A DNA stretch of 64,000 nt from positions 1 to 64,000 of the IMG/VR virus record IMGVR_UViG_3300042391_000634. The stretch is one strand, 5' to 3'. Under the pieces are notes generated by a model, which saw only the letters and a list, made by a program, of their open reading frames with translations, did not search any database and had not been told where the DNA came from. Position numbers and translations under genes: made by a program. Below, piece by piece: positions 6,147-40,610 of the stretch. Within the stretch, counting starts at the first letter, position 1; each line of letters starts with the position of its first letter.

Positions 6147-7499
6147 TTAATTAACGACAATTTCATTTATAGTTATTGTTCCATCTAAATTACCATTTAA
6201 CGCAAGGAAGGTTAGTTTATTATTAACCTTAAATACTTTTACATAAGCCGGTGTAATTTTAGGAATATCTAAACCTTTATTATAATCCCCCATAACACCA
6301 TTATTATTCTTCCAAAATAATTTATTAATGTTAAGTGAATTTCCAGTTTTTAAAAGTTTACCGGCCCATCCATGTAATATAATATCAGGATAACCATCCT
6401 TATCAAAATCGATAATATCAAATTCTCTGAATTGTAATTGGTCAAATGTATAATCTAATCTATTATTAGAAGGTGTAAAGTTTCCTTTACCGTCACTATA
6501 CCAAATTTCAATACCATTGTAATTTGTTCCCTCTGTTGCAATTGCCAAATCAATATTACCATCTTTATTAAAATCGGCGGCTTTAATTGATGTTGAACCT
6601 CTATCGTCTGTTTTAAATATACCAAGAGGACCTGGATCCTTATCTAATTTATATTTCCCAAGAGTTGAGTTATATGAAAAAATACTAACACTATATCTAT
6701 CGTTTGGTTTTTGAAATGTAGGATTAAAACCATAATCTCCTCTAACAATTTCAGGACGAGAATCTCCATATAAATCTTGAATTAAAACTGCACCGCCGGC
6801 TTTTCCACCATAGAAATCTGAAGGGTCAAATATGTTATTGTTTTCGGTAAATGAACCATTACTATTTTGTGTATATGAATGAAGACCAAGATAATTATTA
6901 CCTTTTGTTCCCATGTGTAACCCTATAACATCAATTAAACCATCATTATTAATATCACCTGAAGATACCGAATGATAAAAACTATTAACGGTTGATATGT
7001 TTGAAAATGAAACTTTACTCCCTTCTGTTTTCATTAAAATTAAATTACCAAATGGCCATGGTTGACCATTTAATTCAGGACCAGAATCTGAAAATACCCA
7101 ACTTTGTTTTGTGGTATCAATACAAGTGTAGTTTCTACCACAACCCATAGAAGCCTCAGGATAACTATTTTCATAAGACCAATTATTATTTGTTTTTGTT
7201 AAATGTAAAGTTGGTATTAATGGATATGTATAAAATAATGTTGCAGGTATAATCAAATGTTCAATGTTATCTTTTTGATATAAAATAACACCAGGTATTG
7301 CCAAATTAACACCTTTAGCCACTATGTCGTTTGTAAAGTTTGGAACATTAAAACCAGATATTACTGTGGTTGTTAATGTATAAGGTGAAGTAGGTGGGAT
7401 CACAACTACAGGAGGTTCAATAACTACAGGGGGGACTACAGATTCCTTCTTACAAGATATTATTAATAAAAATAATATAAAATATAGAGTTTTTTTCAT
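6147..7499 (-). CDS. Lipoprotein with FG-GAP/VCBS-like repeats
   Basis: Lipobox LLIISC followed by KKES; repeats GDINNDGLIDVI, DLYGDSRPEIV, ADFNKDGNIDLAI, IDFDKDGYPDII. Confidence 0.8.
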   Translation of the reverse strand: MKKTLYFILFLLIISCKKESVVPPVVIEPPVVVIPPTSPYTLTTTVISGFNVPNFTNDIVAKGVNLAIPGVILYQKDNIEHLIIPATLFYTYPLIPTLHLTKTNNNWSYENSYPEASMGCGRNYTCIDTTKQSWVFSDSGPELNGQPWPFGNLILMKTEGSKVSFSNISTVNSFYHSVSSGDINNDGLIDVIGLHMGTKGNNYLGLHSYTQNSNGSFTENNNIFDPSDFYGGKAGGAVLIQDLYGDSRPEIVRGDYGFNPTFQKPNDRYSVSIFSYNSTLGKYKLDKDPGPLGIFKTDDRGSTSIKAADFNKDGNIDLAIATEGTNYNGIEIWYSDGKGNFTPSNNRLDYTFDQLQFREFDIIDFDKDGYPDIILHGWAGKLLKTGNSLNINKLFWKNNNGVMGDYNKGLDIPKITPAYVKVFKVNNKLTFLALNGNLDGTITINEIVVN

Positions 7500-24773: not shown

Positions 24774-24780
24774 ACCCTGA

Positions 24781-25565
24781 AGGGGACCAAAGGTCCCCGC
24801 AAACTTCCGAGATTGTCACCATTTTACTTCCGAGATTGTCCACGTTTTACTTCCCACTATGTCTCCGACATCCGTGTCGGGAACACCCCCGATTTCCCAC
24901 TCGACCTAATTTTACTACGTTGTTTTCAGGAATAAAATCCCACCTGTAGACCCCTGAAATTTACCCCCATTTTATCCCCGTTATTGACCCTGTTAGAGGG
25001 GTTTTATTTACATGTTTTTATCGTAGGTTGTAAATCGGTATAATAATCCCACTTTTAGTGATATTTATTGATTGTGTATATACCAGCGTCATTTTGGGGA
25101 GAAAGTGGGGAAAAGTGGTAAGTTGTGGGGATTGACCCTTCCGTCAATCGAGACCCATATTCTAAAAATTTCAGATATATAACTGTATTACGGGGTCCTT
25201 CGGACCCCTTCAGGTGTGTCATAGTGTCATACAATGGTATATATGTATATATAATAGGATATGTAATACGTTCATTATTAAGGGACTAATTTCTATTTAA
25301 CATAATACCTGTTATAGGTTCACAAGTTATTAACATTGTCATACACCCTGACGACCGACCGAAGGGAGGGAGGAAACTTACTAACAACTTATCCACATTC
25401 CGTAATACGTCACTTTGCCAGACAATATCACGTTGATAGAATACCCGTTCACAAAACTTGCCAAACAATATTAGAGAACTTTTGGGCCAAACACATTTGT
25501 CCGTCATACATTCGTTCCACTACGGTAATACATAAAACCTGAAGGGGACCCATAGGGTCCCCGTA
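24781..25565. repeat. Non-coding, GC-enriched hairpin/direct-repeat zone at a convergent strand switch
   Basis: GGGGACC-AAA-GGTCCCC (24782), CTTCCGAGATTGTC x2, GGGGTCC-TTCG-GACCCC (25192), GGGGACCC-ATA-GGGTCCCC (about 25544), DnaA box 25389-25397. Confidence 0.6.
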
Positions 25566-25589
25566 ATTATGATTAATGTGTAATACGTA

Positions 25590-26513
25590 TTAATAATCTA
25601 TACCGAAGTTCCCGAAACGAGTTCTTAGAAATGAACGGAATTCTGATTGTTCTTCTTCAGACAGAGGTGAATCCGAAGGAGAGTTCTTTTTACCATCAAC
25701 TATCTCCCACCCAAAATTGGCTGCAACCGTGAACTCAGGATGTAATACTTTGTCTTGTTTGTTGTATGAATTATAATCTTGATGAACAATAAACCCTGCC
25801 TTTTTAACGTCGTAATCACTCAACTCATATGTATGACCTTTCCAAGTTCCCTTTCTAAGAGCTAGAAATACTGTATGGGCTTTCTTAAGTAACTTCTTCA
25901 TATATGGTCCATAGTCATCCGAGAAGGTTGGAAGGTCTGTTGGGGATAATTTATATGTTGATAACAATAGTGACCTTGAAAATAATATATTACCAAGTGG
26001 ACGTGGAGCCGAAACCTTTGTGTTCCATATGTGGTTCTCCATCATGTCCTTTAAGTGAAATATACCCCTCAATGGAAATACATTGATACGTTGTATCTTA
26101 ATGTCATACATGTCCAACAAACTTGTTGGAAAGATAGACGGTTTATCCCTAAGGTCAGGATTAATCTTTATCAAACTATCCACAAAGTCCTCCATACATA
26201 TTGTTAACAAATTTGTTGGGATGACTGGTGTTGAATCCATGTTTGGCATAAAGTCAATATCACATGTAATCTCCCCCAGTACACCTTCTTTGAATCTTTC
26301 TGGTGTGAATGGTATCTCTTCTATACGGATTGAATTATGAATCTCACCCTCGGGAACGATTAGGGTCTTCCAAAAGATATGGTCACTTCTATATTTCTTC
26401 AGGGTCTGAACCAATTTCTCGTTGGACCTTCTTTCAGATTTGAGCTCATCGTTATCGGATGGGATATCTGAAGGTATTGTTTCGTCCTGTTCTCTTAGTT
26501 TACTTAATTTCAT
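25590..26513 (-). CDS. Leader (MKLSKLREQ) plus C-terminal KALKKG domain protein
   Basis: TATTTATA directly upstream on the minus strand; KKAHTVFLALRKG...LRTRFGNFGI. Confidence 0.65.
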   Translation of the reverse strand: MKLSKLREQDETIPSDIPSDNDELKSERRSNEKLVQTLKKYRSDHIFWKTLIVPEGEIHNSIRIEEIPFTPERFKEGVLGEITCDIDFMPNMDSTPVIPTNLLTICMEDFVDSLIKINPDLRDKPSIFPTSLLDMYDIKIQRINVFPLRGIFHLKDMMENHIWNTKVSAPRPLGNILFSRSLLLSTYKLSPTDLPTFSDDYGPYMKKLLKKAHTVFLALRKGTWKGHTYELSDYDVKKAGFIVHQDYNSYNKQDKVLHPEFTVAANFGWEIVDGKKNSPSDSPLSEEEQSEFRSFLRTRFGNFGIDY

Positions 26514-26687
26514 GTATATAAATATTGCCAAACAATATTGACAGTGGATTCCTCCTCAAGGTTTATTTTTTTGCCAAACAATATTCGAGTCATCGTCTTC
26601 TGAGTTACTTTACTATTGACTGTCTACTGTAAACAATAAACCCCCCACAATAGTGGAGGGCTTACTATTGTCGTCCTATTGGGACAA

Positions 26688-26867
26688 TTACGCCGCTAAC
26701 AATTGGTTACGGTATGTAATTGCTGTTCTCTTGTTAGAGAAGTTCTTGCTGTGTTTAGTTCCTTCTACTGATACACGAACACGGTAGCTGTTACCATCAA
26801 AGTATACATTGTTAGAAACTGGCACATAAGTTGTCTTGGTGCGACGGGTTGTTTTTGTTGTTTTCAT
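26688..26867 (-). CDS. Small basic AP2-like DNA-binding protein
   Basis: NVYFDGNSYRVRVSVEGTKHSKNFSNKRTAITYRN resembles the AP2 beta-sheet plus helix; K/T/R-rich N-terminus. Confidence 0.5.
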   Translation of the reverse strand: MKTTKTTRRTKTTYVPVSNNVYFDGNSYRVRVSVEGTKHSKNFSNKRTAITYRNQLLAA

Positions 26868-27141
26868 CTTACTGAATTTAAATTTTAACATTATTGATTA
26901 TATTAAAATATAAAAAAATAAATCCGTAAAAAAAAATAAACGGCAACTATTTTTTCTTTTTCCCAGTAATTGTTTTGCCAAACAACATCCCGAATCCACA
27001 GTGGAACCTTAACTTCTTCTTATATAATCATACCACTCCTCACCCCATCTCTCCTCCATATAGATGAAGTGACCTTTTCTTTCCTCAGTATTAAACATTA
27101 AATACCCTTTAAAGTAATCCTTATACCACCGTAGTTTTCTT

Positions 27142-28061
27142 TTAAACCTTATCATGGTATGTTACATTTACGGTTACCTCATCTAATTTAAATGTATCAT
27201 AGAACTTCTCTAAGACATCTATCTTAGCAAGACCTGTTTCTTCAGGTTCTTGGTAGTAGTGGATGTGTTTCTTAATCTTCTTAATCTCATCCGTAATCCA
27301 TAGTTTAACAAATTGGTCATTCATTTTCTAATAGTTTATATTGTTTATCACCAATAGTATCCAAGATATATGCCACCTCTACTATATCTTCCAAGTCGTA
27401 AGTGGATAGGTCATCGAACTCATCACCATATGGTGTGGTACCTGTTAAGTATTGTCCATCAGACATTGTCTTAACTATGTATGGGACCTTGACCATTGAC
27501 GCGTCGTAGGTATTCTCCTCCGTTACATACACTGTGAACGGGTTGGTAAACTCTATGGTTTCATCAAGTTTGAATAGATTCTCTATCTCATTGCAGAACT
27601 TGGTCTTCAGGTTCTTTACTTCTTCCCTTGAGTTGTAGTTCATATTATTTAATATTAAGTTTGTGGTCAATTGAATATATTTCTTTTATCTTGGACCCAT
27701 CCATATTCACACCATCCTTATTCCAAAACGGTAGGACTCTTGGATTATACTTCACCTGTTGTCCATTGTCGGGGATGAAGTCCTCAGTTCTAATATCGAT
27801 GGTGTCACATAGAACCCACGCACATACCACCTTGTGTTCCCCATTTAATATCTTCATTGCTGTGGTCCTACTATTCTTAAGGACACAATCCTTCATTACC
27901 AACTGAACATCATATGGACTGTAGTATTTGGTATATCCATTTAGGTATTGGACCTTCCACTTCATATAGTTCTCACCTCTCCCGAGGTTGAACCTAACCT
28001 TGATTTTCTTTCCCATATTAATCTTCAGTTTCTTCGTCACAACAATAAACACATTCCCCAT
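27142..28061 (-). CDS. Three hypothetical early proteins (27142-27324, 27317-27670, 27645-about 28013)
   Basis: ORF track; overlapping stops and starts. Confidence 0.6.
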
Positions 28062-28659
28062 CTTCTTCTAAGTCACCTCCACATACTCCACATACATCAC
28101 TCTCGTCCTCATCTTCATCTAAGAGGTCTCTGTCGGAGTTACCAAGATAAGTTATCCTGATTCCTACAATCTTTTCTTTATCCATCATAACCTCCATAGG
28201 ATATTGTCCATCTCCAATACCTGATGAGGTTACCACACCCGTGTCATACGAACCAAATTGGTCCTTATGTATTGTGAACTGACACATCTTCTCATACCAC
28301 TTATCACCACCATCTCTAAAAGGTATTTCGAACGGTTGGTCAAGTGTGGGTGTTGTAATACCTTCTGCTATTTCATCGTTACGGTAACTTGTCATACAGA
28401 AGATTCCACACTGACCTGAGTCAACACCACATTCACTGTGGTCTTCCCACTCAAGTGATACACCATCGTCGGTTATGGATTCGTGAAGTATTGTAATACC
28501 TGATACACGAACACCCCAACCTGTTCCTTCGTCGGACTTTTCAACTTCGACATTGTAGAGACCGGGTAATACATTATCTAATTTGGTTTGACACCAAGTA
28601 TCCAATGAGTAACAAGGATCGGATACCATTACATTTTCGGAGAGAGTAATTTGATTCAT
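28018..28659 (-). CDS. DUF4241-like protein with acidic tail and C-terminal Zn ribbon
   Basis: VSDPCY, GVDSGQCGIF, SSGIGDGQY; CGVCGG..EEDGECVYC. Confidence 0.5.
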   Translation of the reverse strand: MNQITLSENVMVSDPCYSLDTWCQTKLDNVLPGLYNVEVEKSDEGTGWGVRVSGITILHESITDDGVSLEWEDHSECGVDSGQCGIFCMTSYRNDEIAEGITTPTLDQPFEIPFRDGGDKWYEKMCQFTIHKDQFGSYDTGVVTSSGIGDGQYPMEVMMDKEKIVGIRITYLGNSDRDLLDEDEDESDVCGVCGGDLEEDGECVYCCDEETED

Positions 28660-28709
28660 AGTTTTAAGTTTAGGATGTAAAGTTAATAAAGATTTAGAAT
28701 ATCACAAAT

Positions 28710-29210
28710 TTATTTGGAATATATTTTCTTATAGTTATCCACATTTTCTTCTATCTCATATCTCATTACTGTGGATATCTTGTCATACACTCGGTCCATG
28801 AATAACTCATTGCCAGACAATATCGTCACGTCTGCTGTTCCTTCGGGGAAGTATAAATCTATTGGGTCTATAAGAACCCTTACTTCATTAATATCATTAT
28901 CCGACCTGAAGAATGGACAACGACCATACACATAAGTGTTCCTAACAGTGTAGAGTTTAACACACTCTTTCATGTTAGTTAAAGCTCTAATCTGCATAAT
29001 GATTACTTCTAAGTTAGCCAACTGTTGAATGTCCATCTTATGTTTCGAAACCTTGGTTCTATATTCTGTTACAAAGTCTGCCAAACAATATTCGCCTGGC
29101 CCGTCTGTGTTATCACTTCTTGTTATGAACTGGTCATAGGAACTCCTTTCTTTAGAGGTCCCTACAATATTTACAAATACTCCTTCGGTGGTTTTATTTA
29201 CCCTACCCAT
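28710..29210 (-). CDS. Hypothetical protein containing two repeat half-sites and a DnaA box within its coding sequence
   Basis: TGCCAGACAA near 28811, TGCCAAACAA near 29079, TTATCCACA at 28735-28743. Confidence 0.6.
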   Translation of the reverse strand: MGRVNKTTEGVFVNIVGTSKERSSYDQFITRSDNTDGPGEYCLADFVTEYRTKVSKHKMDIQQLANLEVIIMQIRALTNMKECVKLYTVRNTYVYGRCPFFRSDNDINEVRVLIDPIDLYFPEGTADVTILSGNELFMDRVYDKISTVMRYEIEENVDNYKKIYSK

Positions 29211-29423
29211 GTTTTCTTATTTAAAATGTTAAAAAATGCTTCAGTTATTTTGCCAAACCAATTCGACCTGGAGACTCTGGCTGGTCGACCAGAAAAAACC
29301 CTGGTGTTAAAATCGTTCCCTCCATAGTATGGAGTTGGTTTTCTATATGCACTTGCCACACCATATTGGCGGCACCACTCGTCTTGAGGTGGTTGTTTTT
29401 CAGGGTAAGTAGTCTTACTCACT

Positions 29424-30035
29424 TTAGGATTCGACATTGCTTTCTTTTGTTTCGTTATATAATCTTGTTAATTCTTTCTTGTCTTCGTATGATACGAACA
29501 TATATTGGTTAAGGAAGTCTTCTAATGACATCTCTTCGCCCGAGATACTATCTAAACTATAGTCCACTTCAGACCAAAACTCATCTTTAGATAAAATATA
29601 CATTCCCTCAAGGAAACCAAACTCTTGGTCAAAGACATCCAACTCACCATCTTGCCAAGTAAATGTTGTCTCACCTGTAAATCCTACCCCACCTTCAGAG
29701 TAGTAGATGTGTCCATTCACCTGATACATTTTGCACAGATTCTCCATAAAAGGAATGGGAGGACTCCAAGCTGTTTCACAACTAAAAGATATTTCATCTT
29801 TGTTTAATGTAAATGCGTGTCTATCATATGAGATATCCCATTTAGTTCCAAACCAATTTACATTAGTATCATACCATTTCTCTTTGTAATCACCTTCAGA
29901 CATATAGGATGGAATACCTATTAGAGATTTAAACACATCATCATTCTCCTTAAGATTCTTAAGAACAGCGGTGAGGGCTTTAATAGTTCCCTCATTACCG
30001 CTGATTGTAATATTGTTATTGCACCAATTTGGCAT
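29424..30035 (-). CDS. DUF1281/Api92-like ferredoxin-fold protein
   Basis: MPNWCNNNITISG...WYDTNVNWFGTKWD...F.CETAWSPP...Y.EGGVGF.G. Confidence 0.7.
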   Translation of the reverse strand: MPNWCNNNITISGNEGTIKALTAVLKNLKENDDVFKSLIGIPSYMSEGDYKEKWYDTNVNWFGTKWDISYDRHAFTLNKDEISFSCETAWSPPIPFMENLCKMYQVNGHIYYSEGGVGFTGETTFTWQDGELDVFDQEFGFLEGMYILSKDEFWSEVDYSLDSISGEEMSLEDFLNQYMFVSYEDKKELTRLYNETKESNVES

Positions 30036-30291
30036 ATTATAAGAATTTAGTTTTATCGTAGAAGTTATTGTCGAGAGCTTTCTTAATCCCACTAATTAAA
30101 TGACATCTTGGTTCGGTGTCATACACTTCAGGATATTTAACCTTAATTTTCTCTCTTGCGGTATCAAACATAGTTTCGATTACTTCGGGAGTAACTCCTT
30201 TACCTTTTTCAATAAACTTCACAATTTTATTTAATTGTGTTTGACAAGCTGTATCACCAGCTTTACTATACATTTCAAAACTCATAGTATT

Positions 30292-30888
30292 TTAGTTTTC
30301 TTGTTCTTGTTTAAAATCATTTAGGAACTCACTCTCTAATGGTAAGTTATTCAAATCATATTTCTTTATCAACTTGATTGGATAATACTCACTTTCTTTA
30401 TCGGTTAGATTAAAGAACCTGTCCTCTATGGTTAATGGATTTTTATTAAAACCCTCGTAAACCTCTAATACATTCTTATCCAAATCTACAAGATATGCCC
30501 ACTCACAGAATAAACTATCACCTGCGAAGTCGGTGCTATCAGTAATCCATATCTCATCTTCTTCACCATTCATAATCATTTCAAGAATTTTAGCTCCATT
30601 GTCTCTTGTTAGATAAGGATACTTTTCCTGATACAATTTTGACTGGTCTCCATCCATCCAACCATTCTCACATCCAATAGACTTTAGCCACTTGCTAATT
30701 TCTTTTTCTTTACTACCATTCATAAACTTGACCTTACTTAATTTCTTCTTGAAGTCGTCCAAGTTGTTTGTTGATAAAAAGTCTAATACGACAACACCAT
30801 TACCTGATGGGTATCCATCCCATTGTCCGTATTGAGCTACCTTTGTTTCTCCATTGGAGATTACCATTGTTAAGTTTCTTGTTCCCAT
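30292..30888 (-). CDS. Conserved phage hypothetical protein (GTR...QWDGYPSG.G family)
   Basis: MGTRNLTMV...YGQWDGYPSGNG...EWAYLVDLDKNVLEVY. Confidence 0.6.
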   Translation of the reverse strand: MGTRNLTMVISNGETKVAQYGQWDGYPSGNGVVVLDFLSTNNLDDFKKKLSKVKFMNGSKEKEISKWLKSIGCENGWMDGDQSKLYQEKYPYLTRDNGAKILEMIMNGEEDEIWITDSTDFAGDSLFCEWAYLVDLDKNVLEVYEGFNKNPLTIEDRFFNLTDKESEYYPIKLIKKYDLNNLPLESEFLNDFKQEQEN

Positions 30889-31187
30889 TTTTATAAGTTT
30901 AGGATACAAAGATAATCATTATATCATTACACACAAACTTTTTTTGTTAAAATTTTGCTAAAGGATTTTAAATTTCTCACAGACATGCATCTGGTTGATA
31001 TTGTTTGGCAACGTTTGCGCTGGTAAATGCTGCAAATGCGCTCAGGGGGTATTTGTTTGGCAAAATCTTGGTATTGATAATCAATGAGTTATGTTTTGCC
31101 AAACAATATCTGTCTGGTGTGCCTGGTGATTTTTCTGGTAAAACTGGTGAATTGGCTGGTGCGAAGCAACATTGGCACATGCGAAGC

Positions 31188-31216
31188 AAAAAAAATCCCC
31201 CGTATTTCTACGAGGG
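31188..31216 (-). terminator. Repeated intrinsic terminator (CCCTCGTA-GAAA-TACGGGG followed by a U tract)
   Basis: Near-identical copies at about 31191, 33884 and 37250; variants at about 26638, 35039, 36172, 38219, 38808 and 39586. Confidence 0.75.
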
Positions 31217-31640
31217 ACTGAACTAAACTTACGAACCCACCTATCTAAAACTTACTTACTTTGTAATACGTCTTTTAATAATCTGAAAGAACCTTTGATT
31301 ATAGTTGTCTCTTTAATTGCATCATCTATTGATTTAAAACTCTTGTGTAATACGAAAGTCTTACCATCATTAGAATACCAAACATCGTATGTGTTTTTAC
31401 TTTGGGATAAAATAATCTTCGTTGTCATAATAATACGGATTGATTAAGATGTAAAGGTAATACATTTTATATTACAAACAAAAAAATTTAATTATAAACA
31501 TTATTTTTCCACATTTATTTTTGCCAGACAACATCCCTCAGGGGCCTTACATCTTGTCATACAGCAAATAAAAATGGGTATCATTTCTGACACCCATTCT
31601 ATAACAAACACTACTATATTGAACACTTCTATATAATATA

Positions 31641-33577
31641 CTAAATATTTTCCACTTTATCAACTTTGTTGGAATAAACCTCCAATACATCACCCAACTG
31701 ATTCATATTGTATATTTCAGCCGTCGACTCTCCACCATTTTCACTTGGGTCTAATGTTTCTTTGACACCATCTATTTCTTCCCAACTGATTTCATCGAGG
31801 TCTCCCGATTCATACATTTCTTTGGCAATCTTCACGGCTTGGTTTAAGTCCTCAGCTTTAACTTCAAAGTCGGTTCTCATCCACGTGGTAATCTTTTGGT
31901 CTATAAAGAATTCAAATGTTTTCATTGTTACTTATTTAATTCGTTAATTAATGTGATATCAGCTTCGGACATTTCATCTACCATTACTTTACTTAACTCG
32001 TCGAGATGTTTGCCAGAGAATTTGTCATACCCACCCATTTGGTATTTGGGATAAACAATTTTTGTTTCGGTGTCGATTACAGATGCAACTGATTTTAATT
32101 CTACTATCATGTTAATTAATTTAATTTTCTTATTGACATATAATTTTCTAATTCATCCAAAGAAATACGACCATCGTTAGAACTATAATAACCTTGTAGT
32201 TCGTATCGTTTTTTCCATTTATCAAATGCCTCAAATGCTTTTTTCTTTGAGGGGTAATATGGTTTATCGAACTCAATCGTAAACCCGTCGGGGGATAATA
32301 CTTGATACTTTATCATAGTCCTGCGTTTTTAATTATACAATCTAATTTATATTCAAACTCTTGGGTCATACCCTCAATGTCATACACCCTTTTAGTTTCA
32401 TCGTCGTCGGGATGATAAAATGAGATGTCCACTTTAATTACATTTTCATTGGTTTTTTTAACCATTGTTTGTGAATATTCGGTTTCGTGTTTAGTGTCCA
32501 TATGTTGAGAACCACTAAATCTATTTTGTGAATGAACAACTACAACTTGGTGAGGACCTACCGGTTCCCAACCATCGTTAATTTTATTACCAACTACTAC
32601 TGAAAGTCCTTCGGGACTACTTGATGCTACGATTTTATATTCCATTTGATTTAATTCATCATTAAGTTAAAAAATTTGATACCTAACTCTTGTAATTCTT
32701 TACACTTTCTTTTTTTTACTACTTCATCACGAACGTACATTGACTTATCGGATGTAATACCTAAGTCCATCATAGAAAAGAAGTGTTCCCACTTACCACC
32801 AACGAATAACTCACCTGTAAATCTTTCAAGTGCATTGTAACATTCGTAGGTCATTTTTAATTTAACCCCATTAACTTTCGGTTCTTGTATTACTAACACA
32901 TCGTGGGATGTATCCCTTGTGTGTGATTTACTTTCGTAGATTACTTTATTTTTCATTTGTGATAGTTTTAAATTGATTTAGATTACAAAGATAATTTAAT
33001 ATTGTGTTAGGGAAATGTTAAAGTGTTAACGATATAAGGTAACATAATCACCAAAATACTTTTCAAAAACATTTAATAAGTTTTCGTAATCACCTTTCAT
33101 CATTTCAGATTGAATTACTTTACCATCCAAACCTAATTGTTTTGCAAACTTGGATGCCATACCAATTAATACAAATGCGTTTCCATCGGGACCAGTTAGG
33201 TCGATTTCAATTCCTGATTTTTTTTCGTTGATTGACTTTATCATAACTTAATTTTTATTTTTGTTTATAATTTTTTTCTCAAACCATTGTTTCATTGTTA
33301 ATGGTGTTAGGGCATCGGATAAATCAGTTAGAATATATTCTCCTGATTTAATTTTAGTTTCAGTTTCTTTTTTCGATTCCCCCAAAAATTGATTCCTATA
33401 CTTTCCCGTTGTCTTGGAATAATTCCAATAGGTCTCATCCAAATAAACTCTCCCGTCTTCAATCTTTACAATAATACTTTCGTAGGACTGAAAGATTCTT
33501 AAACTTTCGTTTCTAATTACAATCTGATTGGGAACTTTGTTCCCGTTCGAACTTGTTAAATTTCTAATTGTTGTCAT
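31641..33577 (-). CDS. Seven small early hypothetical ORFs (31641-31925, 31928-32110, 32116-32316, 32313-32645, 32651-32956, 33026-33244, 33248-33577)
   Basis: ORF track; TATCTTTG -7 elements upstream (CAAAGATA at about 32986 and about 33596 on the + strand). Confidence 0.6.
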
Positions 33578-33931
33578 ATTATTTGATTTAGGATACAAAG
33601 ATAATTCATTTTAAATTATACTACAAACTATTTTATGTTAAAACTTTGTTAAGATGTAATACGAATGTTTCACCTGTCGTCCGAGCTATGATATTGTTTG
33701 GCATTGTAATACGTTTGCCAAACAACTTTGGATGTCATCGGAACATGTGGGACTTCGGGAACATCAGGAACATCTTTTTGGGAACATTGGGAACATTGGG
33801 AACATGCGCACTGTGAATATCTTCTGGCAAATGCCAAACAATATTCATAGCTCACCAGGTGCTAGTATTTCCTATCGGACAATAAAAAACCCCCGTATTT
33901 CTACGAGGGTTCGGGGGACAAACAATAACCA

Positions 33932-34777
33932 TTAAACCATATGAACCAAATCTGAAAATATCTCTTGTTCTACTTGACCGATACCACCGAACATTTTTGC
34001 CTCGGTATTATCGTTCTTACTATAAGAGTGTGTTGTGTATTTTGTTACACCACTAAACAAACCCCAAAGGTTATCACCTTTACCTTGAATCTCACCATTT
34101 AAGTCAATATAGAATCTACTTAAATTGTTTTTAGTTCTTGTAGATAATTCATCACTATCTAAACTAAATTCAGGTTTGATGCCAAACAACTTTCGTGTCA
34201 CCTTCTCCTTCAACAAATCGTCAAAACGTGTTTCACTCAATTCAGTAATGAATCTGAATGTTTCTTTTTCTTCTTCCAATACAACGTCTAATCTTCTACA
34301 AATGTCTTCCACTTTTAAAGACATAGACTTTGTGTGTCGAACTTTGTTTTGAAGTCCACTCATCACTCTAAAGAATGTGTTCATACAACTGATAGTCGTA
34401 TTAGAATGACCGAATGCTAATGATGTAGAACCATCAAAAGAATTCACACCTGTTAAATAACCCTCAATTCGGTCGTTACCCAATTTAAGGTCGTTACCTT
34501 TTAATTGAACGTAAATACGTCCACCACCTTTGAACTCACCACCACGATGAATTTCTAAACCTGTTCTACCTGATACTTGATGTAATAAGTCCATCAACTC
34601 ATGGTTCTGATAAGGAACATAACCATCAGAGTGTAAACCCACAATATCTTGTGTGTCGTTTCTAACGATTGCTTTTTTGTTTGGAATACTAATACCACTA
34701 ATGGTTTGTAATTCCTCCTGACGTACCGTCCAATTAAGGTTGGTCTTGTCTAATAATGTTTTTACTTGTTCGTTCAT
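33932..34777 (-). CDS. DUF932-family phage/plasmid protein
   Basis: W.V..E.L, AIVR.DT..IVG.HS..Y...QN, NSFDGSTS..F..S.....CMN, LWGLFSGVTKY.TH. Confidence 0.8.
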   Translation of the reverse strand: MNEQVKTLLDKTNLNWTVRQEELQTISGISIPNKKAIVRNDTQDIVGLHSDGYVPYQNHELMDLLHQVSGRTGLEIHRGGEFKGGGRIYVQLKGNDLKLGNDRIEGYLTGVNSFDGSTSLAFGHSNTTISCMNTFFRVMSGLQNKVRHTKSMSLKVEDICRRLDVVLEEEKETFRFITELSETRFDDLLKEKVTRKLFGIKPEFSLDSDELSTRTKNNLSRFYIDLNGEIQGKGDNLWGLFSGVTKYTTHSYSKNDNTEAKMFGGIGQVEQEIFSDLVHMV

Positions 34778-35089
34778 ATAAATTAATTTAGAGTGTAAAG
34801 GTAGGTCTTTTATATTACCCACCAAATAATATTTGTTAACACTTTGTTAAAGAATATGTAATACGAATGGGATCCACTGTGCCATCTGAATATTGATTGG
34901 CAATTGCCAAACAAATTGTCTACGGTGCCCTGAACCAAGTCGTGTTGTCCTGTTTTTTATATAATAAAGTGGACAAGTGTAATACGTTTGCCAAACAATA
35001 TATTTGCATGCATGATGCAGGAAAGTTTGGACATAAAAAAAGGGATTGTCATACGACAACCCCCTCTTACTTTATCACTACTAACCCTC

Positions 35090-35836
35090 TTAAATGTTTC
35101 TCAAATTAATTCTACTTTCTTTGTTTCTACTAAAATTATAGATTTCTTCTATCATTTTAATATATTCATCTACACTACCACAAAAGTGAATATTAGTTGG
35201 TCTTAACTTTACCTTACGAACAAACTCACTAAAAGAAAAGTCTTTACATCTTGTTAAAGTTTTGATAATCGCTCTTACGAATGTTGAACGATTATAACCC
35301 TCAAACAAAGGTTTCAATTCCATAATGTTCATCGCCCATTCAATCGCCTTATCCATATTCTTTGTAACAAACTTACCACTCTCAAAGTTCTCTCTATCAC
35401 AACCACTTAACGAATTCGTACATAACATCATACATTCAGTTGGTCTTAATTCGGGATATTGTTTCATAAAGTTATTTAACTTAATGTAGTGTGGATTTCC
35501 CTCTACAACAAACCCGTGAATATGGTCGGTTATCGCCCAATTCTTTTGACGACTATTTAAACTTCTAATTGTTTCAAAACCTGCGGTCGTTTCTAAAATA
35601 TAAGAAATAGGAACCCCTACTTCCATAGCGGCGGTTACTCTATGTTGTCCATCAATGATTTCACCTTTCTTGTTGATAACAACATAAGAACCTCTTTCCC
35701 AACCACGAACTTTCATATTGTTTACAATATTCTTTACGTGGGATTTGTTAATAACTCTATTGTCACTTCTAAATGTGAAAATAGAATAATCTTTTGTTTG
35801 GTAAACTTCGTTTACTTTTTTTCCGTTACGTATCAT
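35090..35836 (-). CDS. ParB/Srx N-terminal-like protein
   Basis: NR.IN..HVK.I...M, VVINKKGEIIDGQHRVTAA. Confidence 0.7.
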   Translation of the reverse strand: MIRNGKKVNEVYQTKDYSIFTFRSDNRVINKSHVKNIVNNMKVRGWERGSYVVINKKGEIIDGQHRVTAAMEVGVPISYILETTAGFETIRSLNSRQKNWAITDHIHGFVVEGNPHYIKLNNFMKQYPELRPTECMMLCTNSLSGCDRENFESGKFVTKNMDKAIEWAMNIMELKPLFEGYNRSTFVRAIIKTLTRCKDFSFSEFVRKVKLRPTNIHFCGSVDEYIKMIEEIYNFSRNKESRINLRNI

Positions 35837-36225
35837 TTTTATTTTTGTTCAGATTTTATCCTGTCCCCGAGATTGATTAATAATGATAGAACAAAGATAT
35901 GTTGTATATTATTATATTCCAAGTATTATTTAGAATATTTTAGTTAAGAATATGTTAAAGTGTAATACGAAGATTTCCCCGCTGTTGCTGCAGTACGATA
36001 TTGATTGGCAAATTTTTGACCAGTGTTGATGCAGCTCAGGACCAGTGACGATATTGATTGGCAAATGCCAAACAAGTTTCAGCGCATGCGTTGTGGGACT
36101 CGACTAAGTGTAATACGTTTGCCAAACAATATTCCCTGAACTTCACAGTGCCGCTGAATTTGATAAACAAAAAAAAGGATAGTCTTTCGACTACCCTTCT
36201 TCACCTTTTCCAACCTTATGTATTT

Positions 36226-36771
36226 CTACACAAGTTCTTTTTCCAAGTGTTGTAATACGGACTTACCTTCACTTTCACATTCTTCTTCACCAAAATATCC
36301 ACCACAACTTTCAACTAATGTTTTATGTTCGTGTCCTTTATCACAAGTTTCTATTTCATATACTTCATAACAATAAACTTCACCCGTTAGATACTTATCG
36401 TAAGTTTCAATTTCACCTTTAAGGTATTCTTCAACTTTAGTTTCATCAATACCTTCTTTCTTTATCTTATGTTTAGATACAAAGATAAAACCAACCTGTC
36501 CACTATCCCAACGACAATCAAACGGACTTGTTGATATAGTTATACCCGAGTGGTCATATAGATACAAAGGTAAGATAACAACTTCACCTTCATTAGTAAT
36601 AATACCTTCTTTTAATTCGTCCCAACTATCATAATCTTCAGTTCGATAATCAGTCTTGTCACCAAGTTCATACCTTTTGTGAAAACATACCATCGTTCCC
36701 AAGTTATCCCAATCGGTTCGAGGGTTCATTGGGTTTGTGTCTTGTTCAATTTTTAATTCAAATTTTTTCAT
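36226..36771 (-). CDS. Conserved phage hypothetical protein
   Basis: NPRTDWDNLGTM.CFH.RY.LGD...LPLYLYDHSG.TI...WDSGQVGF...SCGGYFG. Confidence 0.65.
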   Translation of the reverse strand: MKKFELKIEQDTNPMNPRTDWDNLGTMVCFHKRYELGDKTDYRTEDYDSWDELKEGIITNEGEVVILPLYLYDHSGITISTSPFDCRWDSGQVGFIFVSKHKIKKEGIDETKVEEYLKGEIETYDKYLTGEVYCYEVYEIETCDKGHEHKTLVESCGGYFGEEECESEGKSVLQHLEKELV

Positions 36772-37305
36772 ATTGTTTGTTTTAGAGTATAAAGGTAAGT
36801 CTTTTATATAACATACCAAAATATTATCGTTAAGACTTTGTTAAAGAATATATCACCTGTTGGGACCGGCATCGATTGAATATTGGTTGGCAATTGCCAA
36901 ACAAATAGCAGCGCGCGCTGCTTTTCACGGGGTATTGTAATACGTTTGCCAAACAATAACCGCACAGGCCTGTGGCGCATGGTCTACAGCATTTCTTGTT
37001 CATTAATTCTTCTTGTTCACGTTCCGTGAACATAGGTAATACGTGAACACTTTTGCCAGACAATATTTCCTGAATTCGAACCGTCGGGGTGTATTCCCTC
37101 CACTATGTATTACGAAAGTCAATGGTAGTAAGGGTTTAATAATTCTTTAGAGAACTTTTAGTAAGTTTTTAGCAAATATTGTAGCAAATAGTGTGAAACT
37201 TGCCAAACAACTTGTCTACAGCGCGCACCCGGTAGATTCTCTACCAAATAAAAACCCCCCGTATTTCTACGAGGGGAACACAATATAAATCACAAACAGA
37301 ACAAA

Positions 37306-37898
37306 CTAATCTACCATATCATATTTCCAATCCATTTTTTCCATAACCTTCTCAATCTTGTCATACACTTTGGAATCTTCTACTCGGTTGAACATTTCAT
37401 CAAACACAAGTATAGAACTCGGGTCACAAAAATAGGTGTTTGTTTCTTTAACAACAACAACGTTGTATTCATCAACATTATACCAATTACCAACTCTTTG
37501 TAATTTCATATCAATTAATTTTTAGGGTTTAAGTAGATTTCCATTCTCGCGGGAACGACTTTTGCCAGATTACATTCATCACAACATTCGTCATCTTCAT
37601 TTTTAGTTTCTAACGGGTGTGGGTCATTACCATAACCTTCTACTTCTTTGTCACAAAGACAACAGATAAACTTTTCCATTTTTATTTAATTTAATACTTG
37701 AAAAATATCCTTACCAATAATCAATCCTAATGTTCTTCCGTTATCCCATTTAACATTGACAACATCAAAACCAACATTATACACAACTCCTTCACGACCA
37801 ACTAAAATTGGTTGTGGGTCATCTTCCATTGGTTCAATAAGTTTAACTCTTTTACCCATAAGTAATTGTGGGTTTACAAGGAAATCATTTACTATCAT
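37306..37898 (-). CDS. Small ORFs 37306-37509, 37515-37679 (Cys-rich CCLC...CCDEC; absent from the track) and 37686-37898 (DUF4314-like)
   Basis: Manual translation MEKFICCLCDKEVEGYGNDPHP...CCDECN; G.RV.LI..M.DD..PI..G.EG.V...VKWDNGRTLGLI.G.D. Confidence 0.55.
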
Positions 37899-38265
37899 AG
37901 TGTTTGTTTTAGAGTGTAAAGATAAGTGTAATACTTTTATATTACAAACTCATTTAGTTAAAACTATGTTAATGTGTAATACGACCAAACCCGTGGAGGA
38001 AGACCGGATAATTTATTGTTTGGCAAAATGTAAAGTAAAACCCCCACAATATGTAATACGAATTCACCCGTGGGACGAGTTTACTCAGGAGATATTGATT
38101 GGCAACCTTGTTACCTTTTTATATAAAACCATAACATAAGTCAAGTTTTTGAATCAATAAACTTGACATCTGCCAAACAATATCCGGATGGAGACGACAG
38201 GTGAGAGGTGTGGAAATAAAAAACCCCCTACTTTCGTAGAGGGTCTTGGTCTTTGGGAGGAATAA

Positions 38266-38532
38266 TTAATTCAATGGAATTTCTTTACCAATACCATACT
38301 CACAAATTTTGTGTAGTAAGGGTAAAACTCTACTACCGATAATCTCATTCAAATACTCATCTCTGTCAAATTCATCATCGGTGTCATCTTCAATGTTTTT
38401 ACCCGTTTGGTCAAAATACATATCACCAATCATTTCAAGAAATTCGTTATCACTCATTTCTTCAATCAATTGTGTTAATCGGTCAGTAATAACTCCATTA
38501 ACAATTTCTAATACTTTTTCTTTTTTGTTCAT
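38266..38532 (-). CDS. Hypothetical protein
   Basis: Start reassigned to MNKKEK, downstream of the conserved TACCTTTACACTCTAAA module. Confidence 0.6.
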   Translation of the reverse strand: MNKKEKVLEIVNGVITDRLTQLIEEMSDNEFLEMIGDMYFDQTGKNIEDDTDDEFDRDEYLNEIIGSRVLPLLHKICEYGIGKEIPLN

Positions 38533-39630
38533 TTTATTTGTTTTAGAGTGTAAAGGTAATACAATTATAGGACATACCAAAATTCATCAGTTAAAACTTT
38601 GTTAATGTAATACGTTTTCACCCGGGTGTAACTGATTGTTGTGTGGCAATTGCCAAACAAGTTCACCGATGGGATCCACGGTGTGTGTCGTAATACGAAT
38701 CTTTGCCAAACAATAGTTCGGATACTTCACGGGGAAGTGTTCCTTCATTAGAATAATTGCCACACAACATCTTAGCGGAACCCTGACTCAAGTCCGTTGT
38801 GGACATAAAAAACCCCCACCATAGAAATGATGAGGGTAAATCTAAAATGAAAACACAGACAATTACATATAAGACCATTTACGACCAAGAATATTGTTTA
38901 CCATTACACGAAACGATTTTTTATACAAACGATACATTCTATCCTCTCCCGTTGAAGTTCCAATTTTATCACTGAACTTAAAAGTCCATATAAAACGAAC
39001 AATAAAGAAAGGAGTTAAAATAAACACGATAATGATAGTTTGCCAAAGAAATTTCAATAGATACTTCATAATTTTAAAATTTTAAATGAGTTTTTAAATT
39101 ACCCTACAAGGACAATGTAGGACATAAAATAGGTTAATGAGAAACTGAACATTAGTAGTCCGTAGATTTTGATTTTCTTTTCCATTTGATTAAGTAGTTT
39201 AGGACACAAAGATAATACTTTTATCTTTATATTTTCTTATCTATTAAGAATTGGTCGTTAAAATTATGTTAATGTAATACCAAGTGGTGAGGAGTTACGA
39301 AGACACAGGAGAATATTGTGTGGCAAATCGGATATGGTTACGAATATTAACGGATATATACGGATATTGCCAATCAATATCACATTCTACAAGGAATCCA
39401 ACATTCGTTGTATGACAATTGCCAAACCATATTATTTTCTACAACCGAGATCCCTTCCATTTTTATTGTTAAACCTATGTTAAAGGTTTGCCAAACAACA
39501 ATTCGGATTTGGATTCTGTGTTCGGTGTTATGTATGACAATTGCCAAACAATAGTTCGGATTACTTCGTAAGGTTCGGGTCAAAAAAAAACCACTCCTTT
39601 CGGAGTGGTCGGTTTGTAGGGGAACAAACC

Positions 39631-40185
39631 TTAAAGAATTGTGTATTCTTGTTTAAGAATTTTAATTCTTTTAATGTGGTCTAAACTCATTACCTTATAG
39701 TTTAAGGTATTGTCTAAACCATTTTGATACTTTGAGTAGTCCGTTTTCGTATCAATAAGGTATTGAGTGAACATTACCTTTTCAATACTATTACCCTCAA
39801 ACACATACTTTGTATCAAGGTAAGAACTATCGTGGTCTTGGTAACGAAAGTAAAATTTCGTTGGGTCGGACTTTAATACTACCAAACTTTTTGATACTAA
39901 CTGATAAGGACTTTCTTTCTTATCCTCGTTTACGATAGGGGTAATTCCTTCGGTCTTATACTTTCTACCTAATTGACCTTCGTAATCAAAACCCGTTTGG
40001 ATATTTGATAACTTTTGTTCAATCAAAACTAAATCGTAATAAGGGTTAGGGTTACTTTTACCACTTACTTTGAAGTCAAGATATTTGTTCATCTTAACTT
40101 TTTTTAATGTTGTCAATCCCACATTAGGGACAAAGATATCTATACCTGATAGTATATCTTTTAGTTCTGTTTTTGTAATGTTCAT
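39631..40185 (-). CDS. Hypothetical protein, first gene of the inverted island
   Basis: Start MNITKTE; TATCTTTG -7 element upstream. Confidence 0.6.
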   Translation of the reverse strand: MNITKTELKDILSGIDIFVPNVGLTTLKKVKMNKYLDFKVSGKSNPNPYYDLVLIEQKLSNIQTGFDYEGQLGRKYKTEGITPIVNEDKKESPYQLVSKSLVVLKSDPTKFYFRYQDHDSSYLDTKYVFEGNSIEKVMFTQYLIDTKTDYSKYQNGLDNTLNYKVMSLDHIKRIKILKQEYTIL

Positions 40186-40235
40186 ATATCTTATTGTTTT
40201 GTTCCCACAAAGATATAGTATATTCCAATACAAAG

Positions 40236-40278
40236 TTAGAATATTCTAATAAAGTTATCCACATTCCGTTGTGGATAA
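40236..40278. promoter_or_regulatory. Palindrome TTAGAATATTCTAA plus an inverted pair of perfect DnaA boxes
   Basis: Palindrome 40236-40249; TTATCCACA 40255-40263 and TGTGGATAA 40270-40278, 6 bp apart. Confidence 0.65.
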
Positions 40279-40319
40279 AGTGTTGATATCGTGGGGGTTC
40301 ACCTTCGGGAACAAAGTTG

Positions 40320-40610
40320 TTTGGCAGTGGGGTGTATAGGGGTGTAGGTAGTGGTAGGGGGGGTCCCCCCTCCCGTATCCCCCCTTTATATAGTCATTTT
40401 GGGGGGGTCTAAACAGGGGGTCAATGCCACGACTGAAATTTTTCCAGAAATTTTTGGGAACATTTAAGGTTTTTTACTGCTCACATTTAAGACTGAAAAT
40501 TAGAACTATATTTCTAATCCATATAATAACTCTTATTATTCGGGGGGTAAAACCTGTAATTGGAAATATATGTCTAAAAACTGAAAAAAAAATTCCAGAA
40601 AATTTTTGGG
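40320..40610. other. G-run-rich non-coding zone at the divergent strand switch (possible terminus, pac or origin)
   Basis: GGGGTGTA x2, GGGGGGGTCCCCCC (40357-40370), GGGGGGGTCT, GGGGGTC; direct repeat ACTGAAA...TTCCAGAAA(A)TTTTTGGGA near 40432 and 40580. Confidence 0.45.

What the first reader, a model, noticed from the sequence alone, without database searches (positions are those of the whole stretch)
30900..39290. Standardised promoter module and terminator bracket each early gene cassette
Seen on the minus strand: CGTATTACA-N-TTAAC(A)-N4-5-TTAAC-N~20-TA(C/T)CTTT(A/G)-N-CTAAA-N-ATG recurs at about 30905-30960, 33596-33662, 34796-34865, 35900-35970, 36790-36845, 37915-37985, 38550-38612 and 39205-39280. 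Spurious ORF starts MVGNIKDLPLHSK, MVCYIKDLPLYSK and MVCPIIVLPLHSK betray the shared DNA. Near-identical GAAA-loop terminators close the cassettes. Known: T4-type phages shuffle early genes through repeated promoter/stem-loop cassettes (PeSLs). Inference: a similar modular shuffling system with a phage-specific TTAAC upstream element replacing the -33 TTTG.
Basis: partly seen in the sequence, partly recalled or inferred. Interest (0 to 1): 0.65.

Follow-up and report, generated by a model that had tools for sequence, protein, structure and literature searches.

The report
Phage early promoter-terminator gene cassettes
A 15-kb block of a 335-kb uncultured phage packs small, mostly unknown genes into units that each start with the same Bacteroidota-type host promoter carrying a phage-specific upstream tag and end with a hairpin terminator, and related phages have gained, lost and reordered these units.

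Summary
On the minus strand between about 40.3 and 25.2 kb, about a dozen transcription units each begin with a recurring promoter module and nine visibly end with a G+C-rich hairpin followed by a T run, mostly with GAAA loops.

The core is the standard Bacteroidota primary-sigma promoter, with TTTG at -33, a 19-20 nt spacer and TAnnTTT(G/A) at -7. The -33 TTTG is present in most modules, so TTAAC does not replace it.

TTAAC-N6-TTAAC lies further upstream, at about -46 and -57. It sits 8 nt from the TTTG in 71 of 78 modules across related phages. All 8 copies in the 335-kb genome fall in this block.

The 210-530 bp spacers between units also hold about 40 copies of a 15-nt half-site ending TTGTTTGGCAA and oriented GTATTAC boxes.

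Gene order is not invariant among relatives. Whole units are gained or lost, units change places, and one conserved 85-nt promoter drives unrelated genes in three genomes. Exchange like that of T4-type PeSLs is therefore supported by comparison. However, the anatomy differs from PeSLs, no recombinase is encoded, and no start-site or DNA-circle data could be obtained.

The parts
40208..40215 (-). -7 box TATCTTTG of the first unit (184-aa gene 39631-40185). It has no clear -33 element and no TTAAC pair.
   Evidence: read directly; the ATG is 22 nt downstream
39186..39281 (-). Promoter module 1: GTATTACA, TTAAC-N6-TTAAC, a 42-nt gap, -7 box at 39214-39207, then a CTAAA leader. It drives a 28-aa ORF and a 68-aa ORF.
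   Evidence: 88-92% identical modules in L013 and L014 drive unrelated genes
38533..38614 (-). Promoter module 2, complete: CGTATTACA, TTAAC pair, TTTG-N19, TACCTTTA at 38558-38551. It drives the 88-aa gene 38266-38532.
37899..37983 (-). Promoter module 3, complete. It drives the DUF4314 gene plus 54-aa and 67-aa genes (37306-37898).
36772..36844 (-). Promoter module 4: TTAAC pair, TTTG-N19, TACCTTTA, but no CGTATTACA. It drives the phrog_6186 gene 36226-36771.
35837..35969 (-). Promoter module 5: CGTATTACA, TTAAC pair, a 43-nt gap, -7 box at 35899-35892, and a longer leader. It drives the ParB-like gene 35090-35836.
34778..34865 (-). Promoter module 6, complete. It drives the DUF932 gene 33932-34777.
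33578..33663 (-). Promoter module 7, complete. It drives a seven-gene operon, 31641-33577.
32985..33029 (-). Internal promoter-like site inside that operon, with TTAAC copies and -7 box TATCTTTG at 32992-32985, upstream of the 101-aa gene.
   Evidence: (family D18)
31429..31484 (-). Host-type promoter without a TTAAC pair (TTTG-N19-TACCTTTA). It drives the 58-aa gene 31252-31428.
30889..30950 (-). Promoter module 9: a single TTAAC, N8, TTTG-N19, TATCTTTG. It drives the unit that starts at 30888.
28678..28708 (-). Host-type promoter (TTTG-N19-TAACTTTA) upstream of the 213-aa gene. It has no TTAAC pair.
39582..39630 (-). Terminator of unit 0 (double hairpin, GAAA loop, T run).
38807..38837 (-). 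Terminator of unit 1.
38218..38247 (-). Terminator of unit 2 (GAAA loop).
37250..37276 (-). Terminator of unit 3. It shares its 20-nt stem-loop with the terminators at 33912 and 31219.
   Evidence: (D14)
36169..36202 (-). Terminator of unit 4 (GAAA loop).
35035..35065 (-). Terminator of unit 5.
   Evidence: conserved in relatives
33884..33912 (-). Terminator of unit 6 (shared stem-loop).
31570..31600 (-). Terminator of unit 7 (GAAA loop).
31188..31219 (-). Terminator of unit 8 (shared stem-loop).
25164..40326 (.). Span that holds the intergenic motif arrays. There are about 40 intergenic copies of the 15-nt half-site (consensus ends TTGTTTGGCAA) in both orientations. They include four perfect 14-bp palindromes and four copies of a 21-27 nt composite of half-site plus CGTATTACA. 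Oriented GTATTAC boxes also lie here. The arrays sit between each terminator and the next promoter.
   Evidence: conserved as blocks in five genomes

Best explanation
The 25.2-40.3 kb minus-strand block is an accessory, most likely early-expressed, region of a 335-kb lytic phage of a Bacteroidota host.

Each unit is read by host RNA polymerase with the host primary sigma factor. The promoter has TTTG at -33, an AT-rich 19-20 nt spacer and TAYCTTT(G/A) at -12 to -5. The predicted start lies in a conserved CTAAA, and a short A-rich leader of about 13 nt without a Shine-Dalgarno sequence follows. Each unit is closed by an intrinsic terminator. This gives insulated one- to seven-gene units of orphan genes and genes resembling anti-defence or plasmid leading-region genes (DUF932, DUF4314, ParB-like, DUF1281_C).

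The TTAAC direct repeat is an extra upstream element at about -46 and -57. Its two copies are 11 bp apart, so they lie on one face of the helix, and it keeps a rigid 8-nt distance to the -33 TTTG. It most likely serves as an UP-like or activator-type contact that marks this block as one co-regulated set.

The long, G+C-richer spacers carry phased 15-nt half-sites, palindromes and GTATTAC boxes. These are most simply read as operators for a phage-specific regulator of the block.

Because the regulatory DNA is repeated at every unit and is better conserved than several of the genes it flanks, it supplies homology for general recombination. That would explain the gain, loss, replacement and reordering of units seen among relatives.

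Shown: the motifs, their geometry, their statistics, their conservation, and the unit-level mosaicism. Inferred: promoter activity and timing, what binds TTAAC and the half-sites, and recombination at the modules as the cause of the mosaicism.
For: -
- The match to the published Bacteroidota consensus (TTTG at about -33, TAnnTTTG at -7, T-12 to G-5, AT-rich motifs at -18 and -28) comes from PMC7366714 and PMC6847099.
- Shine-Dalgarno-like 4-mers are depleted upstream of 250 long ORFs (0.04 against 0.09 at random), and leaders are A-rich.
- Related phage loci carry 10-18 strict -33/-7 promoters per 20 kb on the gene strand and 0-2 on the other strand.
- TTAAC-to-TTTG spacing is 8 nt in 71 of 78 modules from 17 loci.
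- Footprinting in five genomes shows the motif blocks conserved while the DNA between them varies.
- The same core promoter, without TTAAC, precedes other genes, including the phage's own RpoD/RpoS-like sigma gene. This fits a cascade from host sigma to phage sigma.
- Terminators are documented.
- Gene content is documented.
- Mosaicism: adjacent genes are 51-94% identical to the 334-kb relative, and the window's DUF4314 gene resembles one relative while its phrog_6186 gene resembles another. Whole units are gained or lost. ParB, DUF932, DUF4314 and the 184-aa gene change relative order between lineages. One promoter is fused to three unrelated genes.
- No tyrosine or serine recombinase is encoded.
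Against:
- Four of the eight -7 boxes end in A where G at -5 is nearly invariant in Flavobacterium johnsoniae.
- Two modules lack a -33 TTTG.
- The host is inferred only from promoter type, the lack of Shine-Dalgarno sequences, weak sigma similarity to huge phages assigned to Prevotella, and two motif-bearing contigs binned in a Chitinophagaceae genome assembled from a metagenome.
- TTAAC at this position is not enriched in 150 genomes of that phylum (7 matches against 6 control). It is therefore not a general host UP element, and its binder is unknown.
- Exact repeats shared between spacers are only 14-27 nt, which is short for homologous exchange.
- About three of eight content differences from the closest relative lie inside operons.
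Confidence: 0.72

Rival explanations
1. One reading: a PeSL-like system dedicated to shuffling early genes, in which a phage-specific TTAAC element has taken over the role of the -33 TTTG.
For: Units bracketed by repeated regulatory DNA differ in presence and order among relatives. PeSLs are defined as promoter plus stem-loop elements in hyperplastic regions.
Against: The TTTG is present at -33 in most modules, and TTAAC lies 8 nt upstream of it. Terminator and promoter are not fused but are 150-450 bp apart. Some gene turnover happens inside operons. No recombinase is encoded, and DNA circles could not be tested.
Confidence: 0.15
2. The modules are middle promoters read with one of the two phage-encoded sigma-70-family proteins. 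In this reading TTAACA acts as a -35-like hexamer and the TATAAT-like stretch just after the TTTG acts as a -10, rather than the modules being host-sigma early promoters.
For: The phage encodes an RpoD/RpoS-like sigma. TTAACA is 5/6 of TTGACA, and TATAAT-like hexamers recur in the spacer.
Against: TTAACA-to-TATAAT spacing ranges from 11 to 19 nt and is mostly too short, whereas the -33/-7 geometry is rigid. An AT-rich motif at about -28 is a normal feature of host promoters. The sigma gene itself has the same -33/-7 promoter. TTAAC is confined to one block, not spread over middle or late genes.
Confidence: 0.08
3. The half-site and palindrome arrays, and perhaps the TTAAC pairs, are mainly DNA-organising sites rather than transcription operators. 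Examples would be a ParB/KorB-like loading or partition array for the ParB-like protein encoded in the block, or replication iterons.
For: The ParB-like gene lies in the block. Palindromic sites are often spaced 52-54 nt apart. The sites are confined to one 15-kb region. Every lineage with the half-site whose locus extends past the phrog_6186 gene also has the ParB-like gene.
Against: The protein has no Pfam or NCBIfam ParB hit. It is only 51-52% identical between genomes that share the same half-site. Two lineages have the gene without the exact half-site motif. In other lineages TTGGCAA sits at a fixed distance from the -33 element, which points to transcription.
Confidence: 0.15
4. The repeats are chance or low-complexity matches in an AT-rich genome.
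For: The genome is 31% G+C.
Against: The full module occurs 5 times against 0.00 expected. The half-site core occurs 29 times against 1.2 expected, with 26 copies in this block. The motifs are conserved in position across divergent relatives.
Confidence: 0.01

Closest known systems
PeSLs (promoter-early stem-loops) of T4-type phages (PMC2839356, PMC4122927)
   Same: Both are repeated host-sigma early promoters paired with terminator hairpins that flank small orphan genes in a plastic region. In both, gains, losses and replacements between relatives involve these elements, and the units are transcriptionally insulated.
   Different: There is no sequence relation, and the promoter is the Bacteroidota -33/-7 type, not the sigma-70 -35/-10 type. 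The hairpin and promoter are not fused in one short element but lie 150-450 bp apart, separated by a structured spacer with its own conserved motifs. An extra, rigidly spaced TTAAC element is present. Mini-circles were not tested.
Bacteroidota primary-sigma promoters (TTTG / TAnnTTTG; PMC7366714, PMC6847099)
   Same: The -7 box has no G at -10 or -9, the TTTG lies 19-20 nt upstream, the spacer is AT-rich, and the leader is short, A-rich and lacks a Shine-Dalgarno sequence.
   Different: Half of the window's boxes end in A instead of G. A TTAAC repeat is added at about -46 and -57, and this is not found above background in 150 genomes of the phylum. The 18-nt distance from box to ATG is unusually uniform.
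Host-takeover module of Bacillus phage SPO1 and the early promoter arrays of T5 and T4 (from my own knowledge, not checked with a tool here)
   Same: Both are a dense run of strong host-sigma promoters and terminators driving many small early genes in one genome segment.
   Different: The host phylum and promoter type differ. No phased operator-like arrays in long spacers are described for those phages, to my knowledge.
UP elements and class I activator sites of E. coli promoters; KorB operators of plasmid RK2; Aca-repressed anti-CRISPR promoters (from my own knowledge; these are working analogies only)
   Same: The element lies at -40 to -60 on one helical face and keeps its phase when moved by one turn. 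Palindromic operators at variable distance upstream of many promoters of one regulon sit next to genes resembling anti-defence genes.
   Different: No binder has been identified, and the motifs are unrelated in sequence. Whether the effect is activation or shut-off is unknown.

Membership tests
Bacteroidota primary-sigma (sigma-ABfr type) promoter | -7 element TAnnTTTG, with no G at the two n positions | tested here: met
   All eight modules have TA(C/T)CTTT(G/A). Four of the eight end in A rather than G. In relatives, 65 of 78 boxes end in G.
Bacteroidota primary-sigma (sigma-ABfr type) promoter | TTTG at about -33, roughly 19-20 nt upstream of the -7 box | tested here: met
   It is present in six of the eight listed modules and absent in those at 35899 and 39214. 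Spacing is 19 or 20 nt in all 78 related modules selected with TTAAC.
Bacteroidota primary-sigma (sigma-ABfr type) promoter | A transcription start a few nucleotides downstream of the -7 box, with activity dependent on the host holoenzyme | not testable with these tools
PeSL (T4-type promoter-early stem-loop) | One short composite intergenic element in which the stem-loop overlaps or adjoins the early promoter | tested here: not met
   The hairpin and the next promoter are separated by about 150-450 bp of structured spacer.
PeSL (T4-type promoter-early stem-loop) | Concentrated in a hyperplastic region of small orphan genes | tested here: met
   Most genes have no family match or only an unknown-function one. 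Gene content is variable among 30 related loci.
PeSL (T4-type promoter-early stem-loop) | Gain, loss and replacement breakpoints between relatives map to the elements | tested here: inconclusive
   Three whole-unit differences exist, including one flanked by two homologous modules, and there is a sharp promoter-to-gene junction. However, about three of eight differences lie inside operons, and the relatives are too divergent (70-90% nucleotide identity) to fix crossover points.
PeSL (T4-type promoter-early stem-loop) | Excised mini-circles formed by exchange between flanking elements | not testable with these tools
Intrinsic (factor-independent) terminator | A G+C-rich stem-loop followed directly by a T run, at the 3' end of a transcription unit | tested here: met
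   Nine sites lie on the gene strand between stop codons and the next promoter. Stems differ between copies and genomes but stay paired.
Integron-type gene cassette array | A site-specific tyrosine recombinase with attC-type recombination sites | tested here: not met
   The whole 335-kb genome has no Phage_integrase or Resolvase domain. In addition, these units carry their own promoters.
UP element (RNA polymerase alpha C-terminal domain site) of the host | An upstream element at about -40 to -60 that is used generally by host promoters | tested here: inconclusive
   The position fits. The pattern with TTAAC is not above the reversed-pattern control in 150 genomes of the phylum (7 against 6), and the true host is unknown.

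The most novel reading that the evidence does not exclude
The block is a self-contained regulon of a clade of uncultured large phages.

Its promoters carry a rigidly spaced, lineage-specific upstream tag: TTAAC here, TTGGCAA, TACTGGA or CCCAGTAAT in sister lineages. Its unusually long, G+C-richer spacers carry 15-nt operators, often about 53 bp apart, and oriented GTATTAC boxes.

Together these would form the binding platform for a co-evolving phage factor that switches the whole block of anti-defence-like genes on or off. That factor could be delivered in the virion, or it could resemble ParB or KorB. The same platform would serve as the homology scaffold that lets units move between co-infecting phages.
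Probability: 0.3. Interest if true: 0.7.

Novelty: new variant of a known kind. Interest (0 to 1): 0.5.

Why it matters
Little is known about how phages of Bacteroidota control their first genes. This block gives a clean, repeated, evolutionarily footprinted set of phage promoters for that phylum. It includes an upstream element with fixed geometry that host genomes do not seem to use, and a candidate operator system.

It provides ready-made parts (promoter, leader, terminator) for genetics in Bacteroidota, and a concrete regulon in which to look for a phage early-gene regulator.

It also extends the idea that repeated regulatory DNA channels gene exchange in the plastic regions of large phages. 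That idea was described for T4-type phages. Here it applies to an unrelated clade with a different promoter type.

Tried and rejected
- Nucleotide search of the region against 50,697 phage records found no match. The sigma gene as DNA also found none.
- tRNA and Rfam scans of the region found nothing.
- One viral-contig scan was wasted on a pattern with the wrong internal spacing.
- Pfam RNA polymerase beta and beta-prime domains were not found in the genome. A phiKZ-type virion polymerase reading of GTATTAC has no support, though very divergent polymerases could be missed.
- A sigma-54 reading of the composite motif (TGGCA, then N7, then TTACA) was rejected. The -12 GC is AC in every copy, and only the composite copies fit the geometry (reading).
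- A sigma-70 -35/-10 reading (TTAACA with TATAAT) was rejected because the spacing is inconsistent.
- An integron-like reading was rejected because no recombinase is encoded.
- A genome-wide Chi-like or skewed-oligomer reading of GTATTAC was rejected because the motif is confined to 20-40 kb.
- The terminase Pfam model gave no hit, and the DUF932 protein hits only distant actinophage genes, so neither names a host.
- The small ORFs inside spacers (for example 36830-37033 and 30977-31180) have no relatives in related loci and were treated as non-coding.

Full report
**Context.** The window is the first 64 kb of a 335,630-bp IMG/VR virus record with 31% G+C, rated complete by CheckV. It has no nucleotide match among 50,697 deposited phage genomes. 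The finding lies in a minus-strand gene block that runs from a G+C-rich divergent region at about 40.3 kb down to convergent hairpins at about 25.2 kb.

**Observation.**
- The complete module is (C)GTATTACA, then 0-5 nt, TTAAC-N6-TTAAC, 8-9 nt, TTTG, 19-20 nt and TAYCTTT(G/A). The ATG usually lies 18 nt after the box, across a leader that begins with CTAAA.
- Five sites are complete (-7 boxes at 33603, 34803, 36797, 37924, 38558), although 36797 lacks the GTATTACA.
- Two sites (35899 and 39214) have the TTAAC pair 42-43 nt from the box instead of 31-32 nt, which is one helical turn further, and have no TTTG at -33.
- One site (30914) has a single TTAAC plus a one-mismatch distal copy.
- Against a first-order Markov model of the genome, the full module occurs 5 times against 0.00 expected.
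- All 8 TTAAC-N6-TTAAC copies in the genome lie in this block on the minus strand, against 4.25 expected genome-wide on both strands. One of the eight, at 39483, has no promoter behind it.
- CGTATTACA occurs 16 times, 15 of them here.
- The 'spurious ORF starts' are TTG-initiated in-frame extensions that run through the promoter.
- Nine hairpin-plus-T-run terminators close the units. Three share an identical 20-nt stem-loop. Seven have GAAA loops.

**What the module is.**
TTTG at -33 with TAnnTTTG at -7 is the published consensus of the primary sigma factor of Bacteroidota (PMC7366714).
- In Flavobacterium johnsoniae the box spans T-12 to G-5, never has G at -10 or -9, and is accompanied by AT-rich motifs at -18 and -28 (PMC6847099). 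The window's boxes and their conserved AT-rich spacers fit this. One deviation is that four of the eight boxes end in A.
- Shine-Dalgarno-like words are depleted upstream of 250 long ORFs genome-wide (0.04 against 0.09 at random positions), and leaders are A-rich, as expected for this phylum.
TTAAC lies upstream of it, at about -49 to -45 and -60 to -56. The two copies are 11 bp apart, so they sit on the same face of the helix.

**Relatives.**
- An exact-motif scan of viral contigs found six related records, one of 334 kb.
- A protein-guided scan with the phrog_6186-like gene returned 80 loci, many from contigs of 250-360 kb.
- In these loci the strict -33/-7 promoter occurs 10-18 times per 20 kb on the gene strand and 0-2 times on the other strand. 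The core promoter array is therefore a feature of the clade.
- Among 78 non-redundant modules with a proximal TTAAC, from 17 loci, the TTAAC-to-TTTG spacing is 8 nt in 71, and the distal copy is conserved as TTnAC.
- Sister lineages put a different short motif in the same promoter-proximal slot: TTGGCAA, TACTGGA or CCCAGTAAT.
- In 150 genomes of the phylum of a Chitinophagaceae metagenome-assembled genome that holds two motif-bearing contigs, TTAAC-N8-TTTG-N19-20-TAnnTTTG occurs 7 times against 6 for the reversed control. The tag is therefore not a general host promoter feature.
- Inside this genome, the same core promoter without TTAAC precedes other genes, including the phage's own RpoD/RpoS-like sigma gene. 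This fits a cascade from host sigma to phage sigma and marks TTAAC as specific to this block.

**The spacers.**
- The intergenic regions are 210-530 bp long and G+C-richer than the coding DNA, which is unusual for a phage.
- They hold about 40 copies of a 15-nt half-site (consensus ending TTGTTTGGCAA) in both orientations. The 10-nt core occurs 29 times in the genome, 26 of them in this block, against 1.2 expected.
- They also hold four perfect 14-bp palindromes, four copies of a 21-27 nt composite of half-site plus CGTATTACA, and oriented GTATTAC boxes. GTATTAC occurs 28 times on the minus strand in 20-40 kb against about 1 per 10 kb elsewhere.
- Successive forward half-sites are often 52-54 nt apart.
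- An alignment of the spacer upstream of the DUF932 gene from five genomes shows these blocks conserved while the DNA between them varies in sequence and length.
- No known RNA family, tRNA or conserved ORF explains the spacers.
- I read them as operator arrays for an unidentified phage-specific factor. This is inference.

**Gene content.** The units encode DUF932, DUF4314, a ParB-like protein (PHROG match only), a phrog_6186 protein, DUF1281_C, an L5 gp82-like protein and many orphans. This is a set typical of accessory, anti-defence-like or plasmid leading-region genes.

**Shuffling.** Order is not invariant.
- Compared with the 334-kb relative, two whole units of the window are absent.
- An extra unit is present in that relative, flanked by two homologous regulatory modules of about 150 nt. 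Exchange between them would give the window's arrangement.
- Between lineages, the ParB-like, DUF932, DUF4314, phrog_6186 and 184-aa genes change relative order.
- Adjacent genes differ sharply in similarity to one relative (94%, 59%, 51% and 93% amino-acid identity), and the window combines one relative's DUF4314 type with another's phrog_6186 type.
- The spacer upstream of DUF932 is 86-88% identical where the neighbouring ParB-like gene is 69%.
- An 85-nt promoter module is 88-92% identical in three genomes, with conservation starting at GTATTACA and ending just after CTAAA. It is followed by three unrelated genes.
- Against a strict module-dependent mechanism: about three of eight content differences lie inside operons, exact repeats shared between spacers are only 14-27 nt, and no tyrosine or serine recombinase is encoded. 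Any exchange must therefore use general recombination.

**Comparison with PeSLs.** PeSLs are short composite elements in which a sigma-70-like early promoter and a stem-loop overlap or adjoin. They lie in hyperplastic regions, with breakpoints and mini-circles mapping to them (PMC2839356 and PMC4122927). Here the function and setting are alike, but the anatomy differs. The promoter type is different, the hairpin and promoter are 150-450 bp apart, and a structured spacer and an upstream tag are added. This is a functional analogue, not a member.

**Limits.** Promoter activity, timing, terminator efficiency and circles are therefore untested. The host is inferred, not shown. The binders of TTAAC, GTATTAC and the half-site are unknown.

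**Verdict.** It is best explained as an array of Bacteroidota-type host promoters and intrinsic terminators that form insulated accessory-gene units, with a phage-specific upstream tag and operator-like spacers. The units are exchanged among related large phages. It is a new variant of a known kind and of moderate interest.

Noticed in passing
window 25164-40326, intergenic parts: There are about 40 copies of a 15-nt half-site (ending TTGTTTGGCAA), four perfect 14-bp palindromes and oriented GTATTAC boxes. They are confined to this block, often spaced 52-54 nt apart, and sit in spacers that are G+C-richer than the genes. The binder is unknown.
   Followed up: partly
window about 33730-33810, 31110-31180 and 39330-39560 (minus strand): Each spacer also has its own private short repeat: GTTCCC six times, CACCAG five times, ATCCG five times. 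A similar GTTCC repeat sits in a non-orthologous spacer of the 334-kb relative (L010 about 6950-6990).
   Followed up: no
G000:C1:214398-215236 (+) and 133850-134035 (-): The phage encodes two sigma-70-family proteins. The 269-aa one scores as RpoD/RpoS-like and has its own host-type -33/-7 promoter. Its closest phage hits include huge uncultured phages and phages assigned to Prevotella, at about 30-33% identity.
   Followed up: partly
window 40280-40450: The divergent region at the head of the block is G+C-rich (0.44-0.47) and contains runs of six to eight G and C.
   Followed up: no
window 24776-24802 and 25188-25214: Two 27-nt arms are 85% complementary and lie 385 nt apart. Each contains its own tetraloop hairpin. 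They look like convergent terminators where the minus-strand block meets plus-strand genes.
   Followed up: no
window about 37015-37045 (minus strand); L010 about 7040-7075: A GTTCACG...CGTGAAC inverted repeat lies in the longest spacer (37305-36772) and is conserved in the 334-kb relative.
   Followed up: no
window promoter modules; L042, L044: The -7 boxes fall into two co-varying forms: ...TTTG followed by TAT or TGT, and ...TTTA followed by CAC or CAT. A TATAAT-like hexamer recurs 2-6 nt after the -33 TTTG. These may be promoter subclasses, or the host's -28 AT-rich motif.
   Followed up: partly
window 7517 (-), 7618 (+), 50992, 59655, 60762 (+); G000:C1:65200 (-), 328433 (+): Further near-consensus host-type promoters have the same 17-20 nt box-to-ATG distance and CTAAA leader, but no TTAAC or GTATTAC. 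This suggests other early units outside the block.
   Followed up: no
L017-L019 (genome contigs): The 21-nt composite motif occurs on two short contigs binned into a Chitinophagaceae metagenome-assembled genome and on one in an Acidimicrobiaceae one. These are probably phage fragments swept in by binning, and they give only a weak hint about the host.
   Followed up: partly
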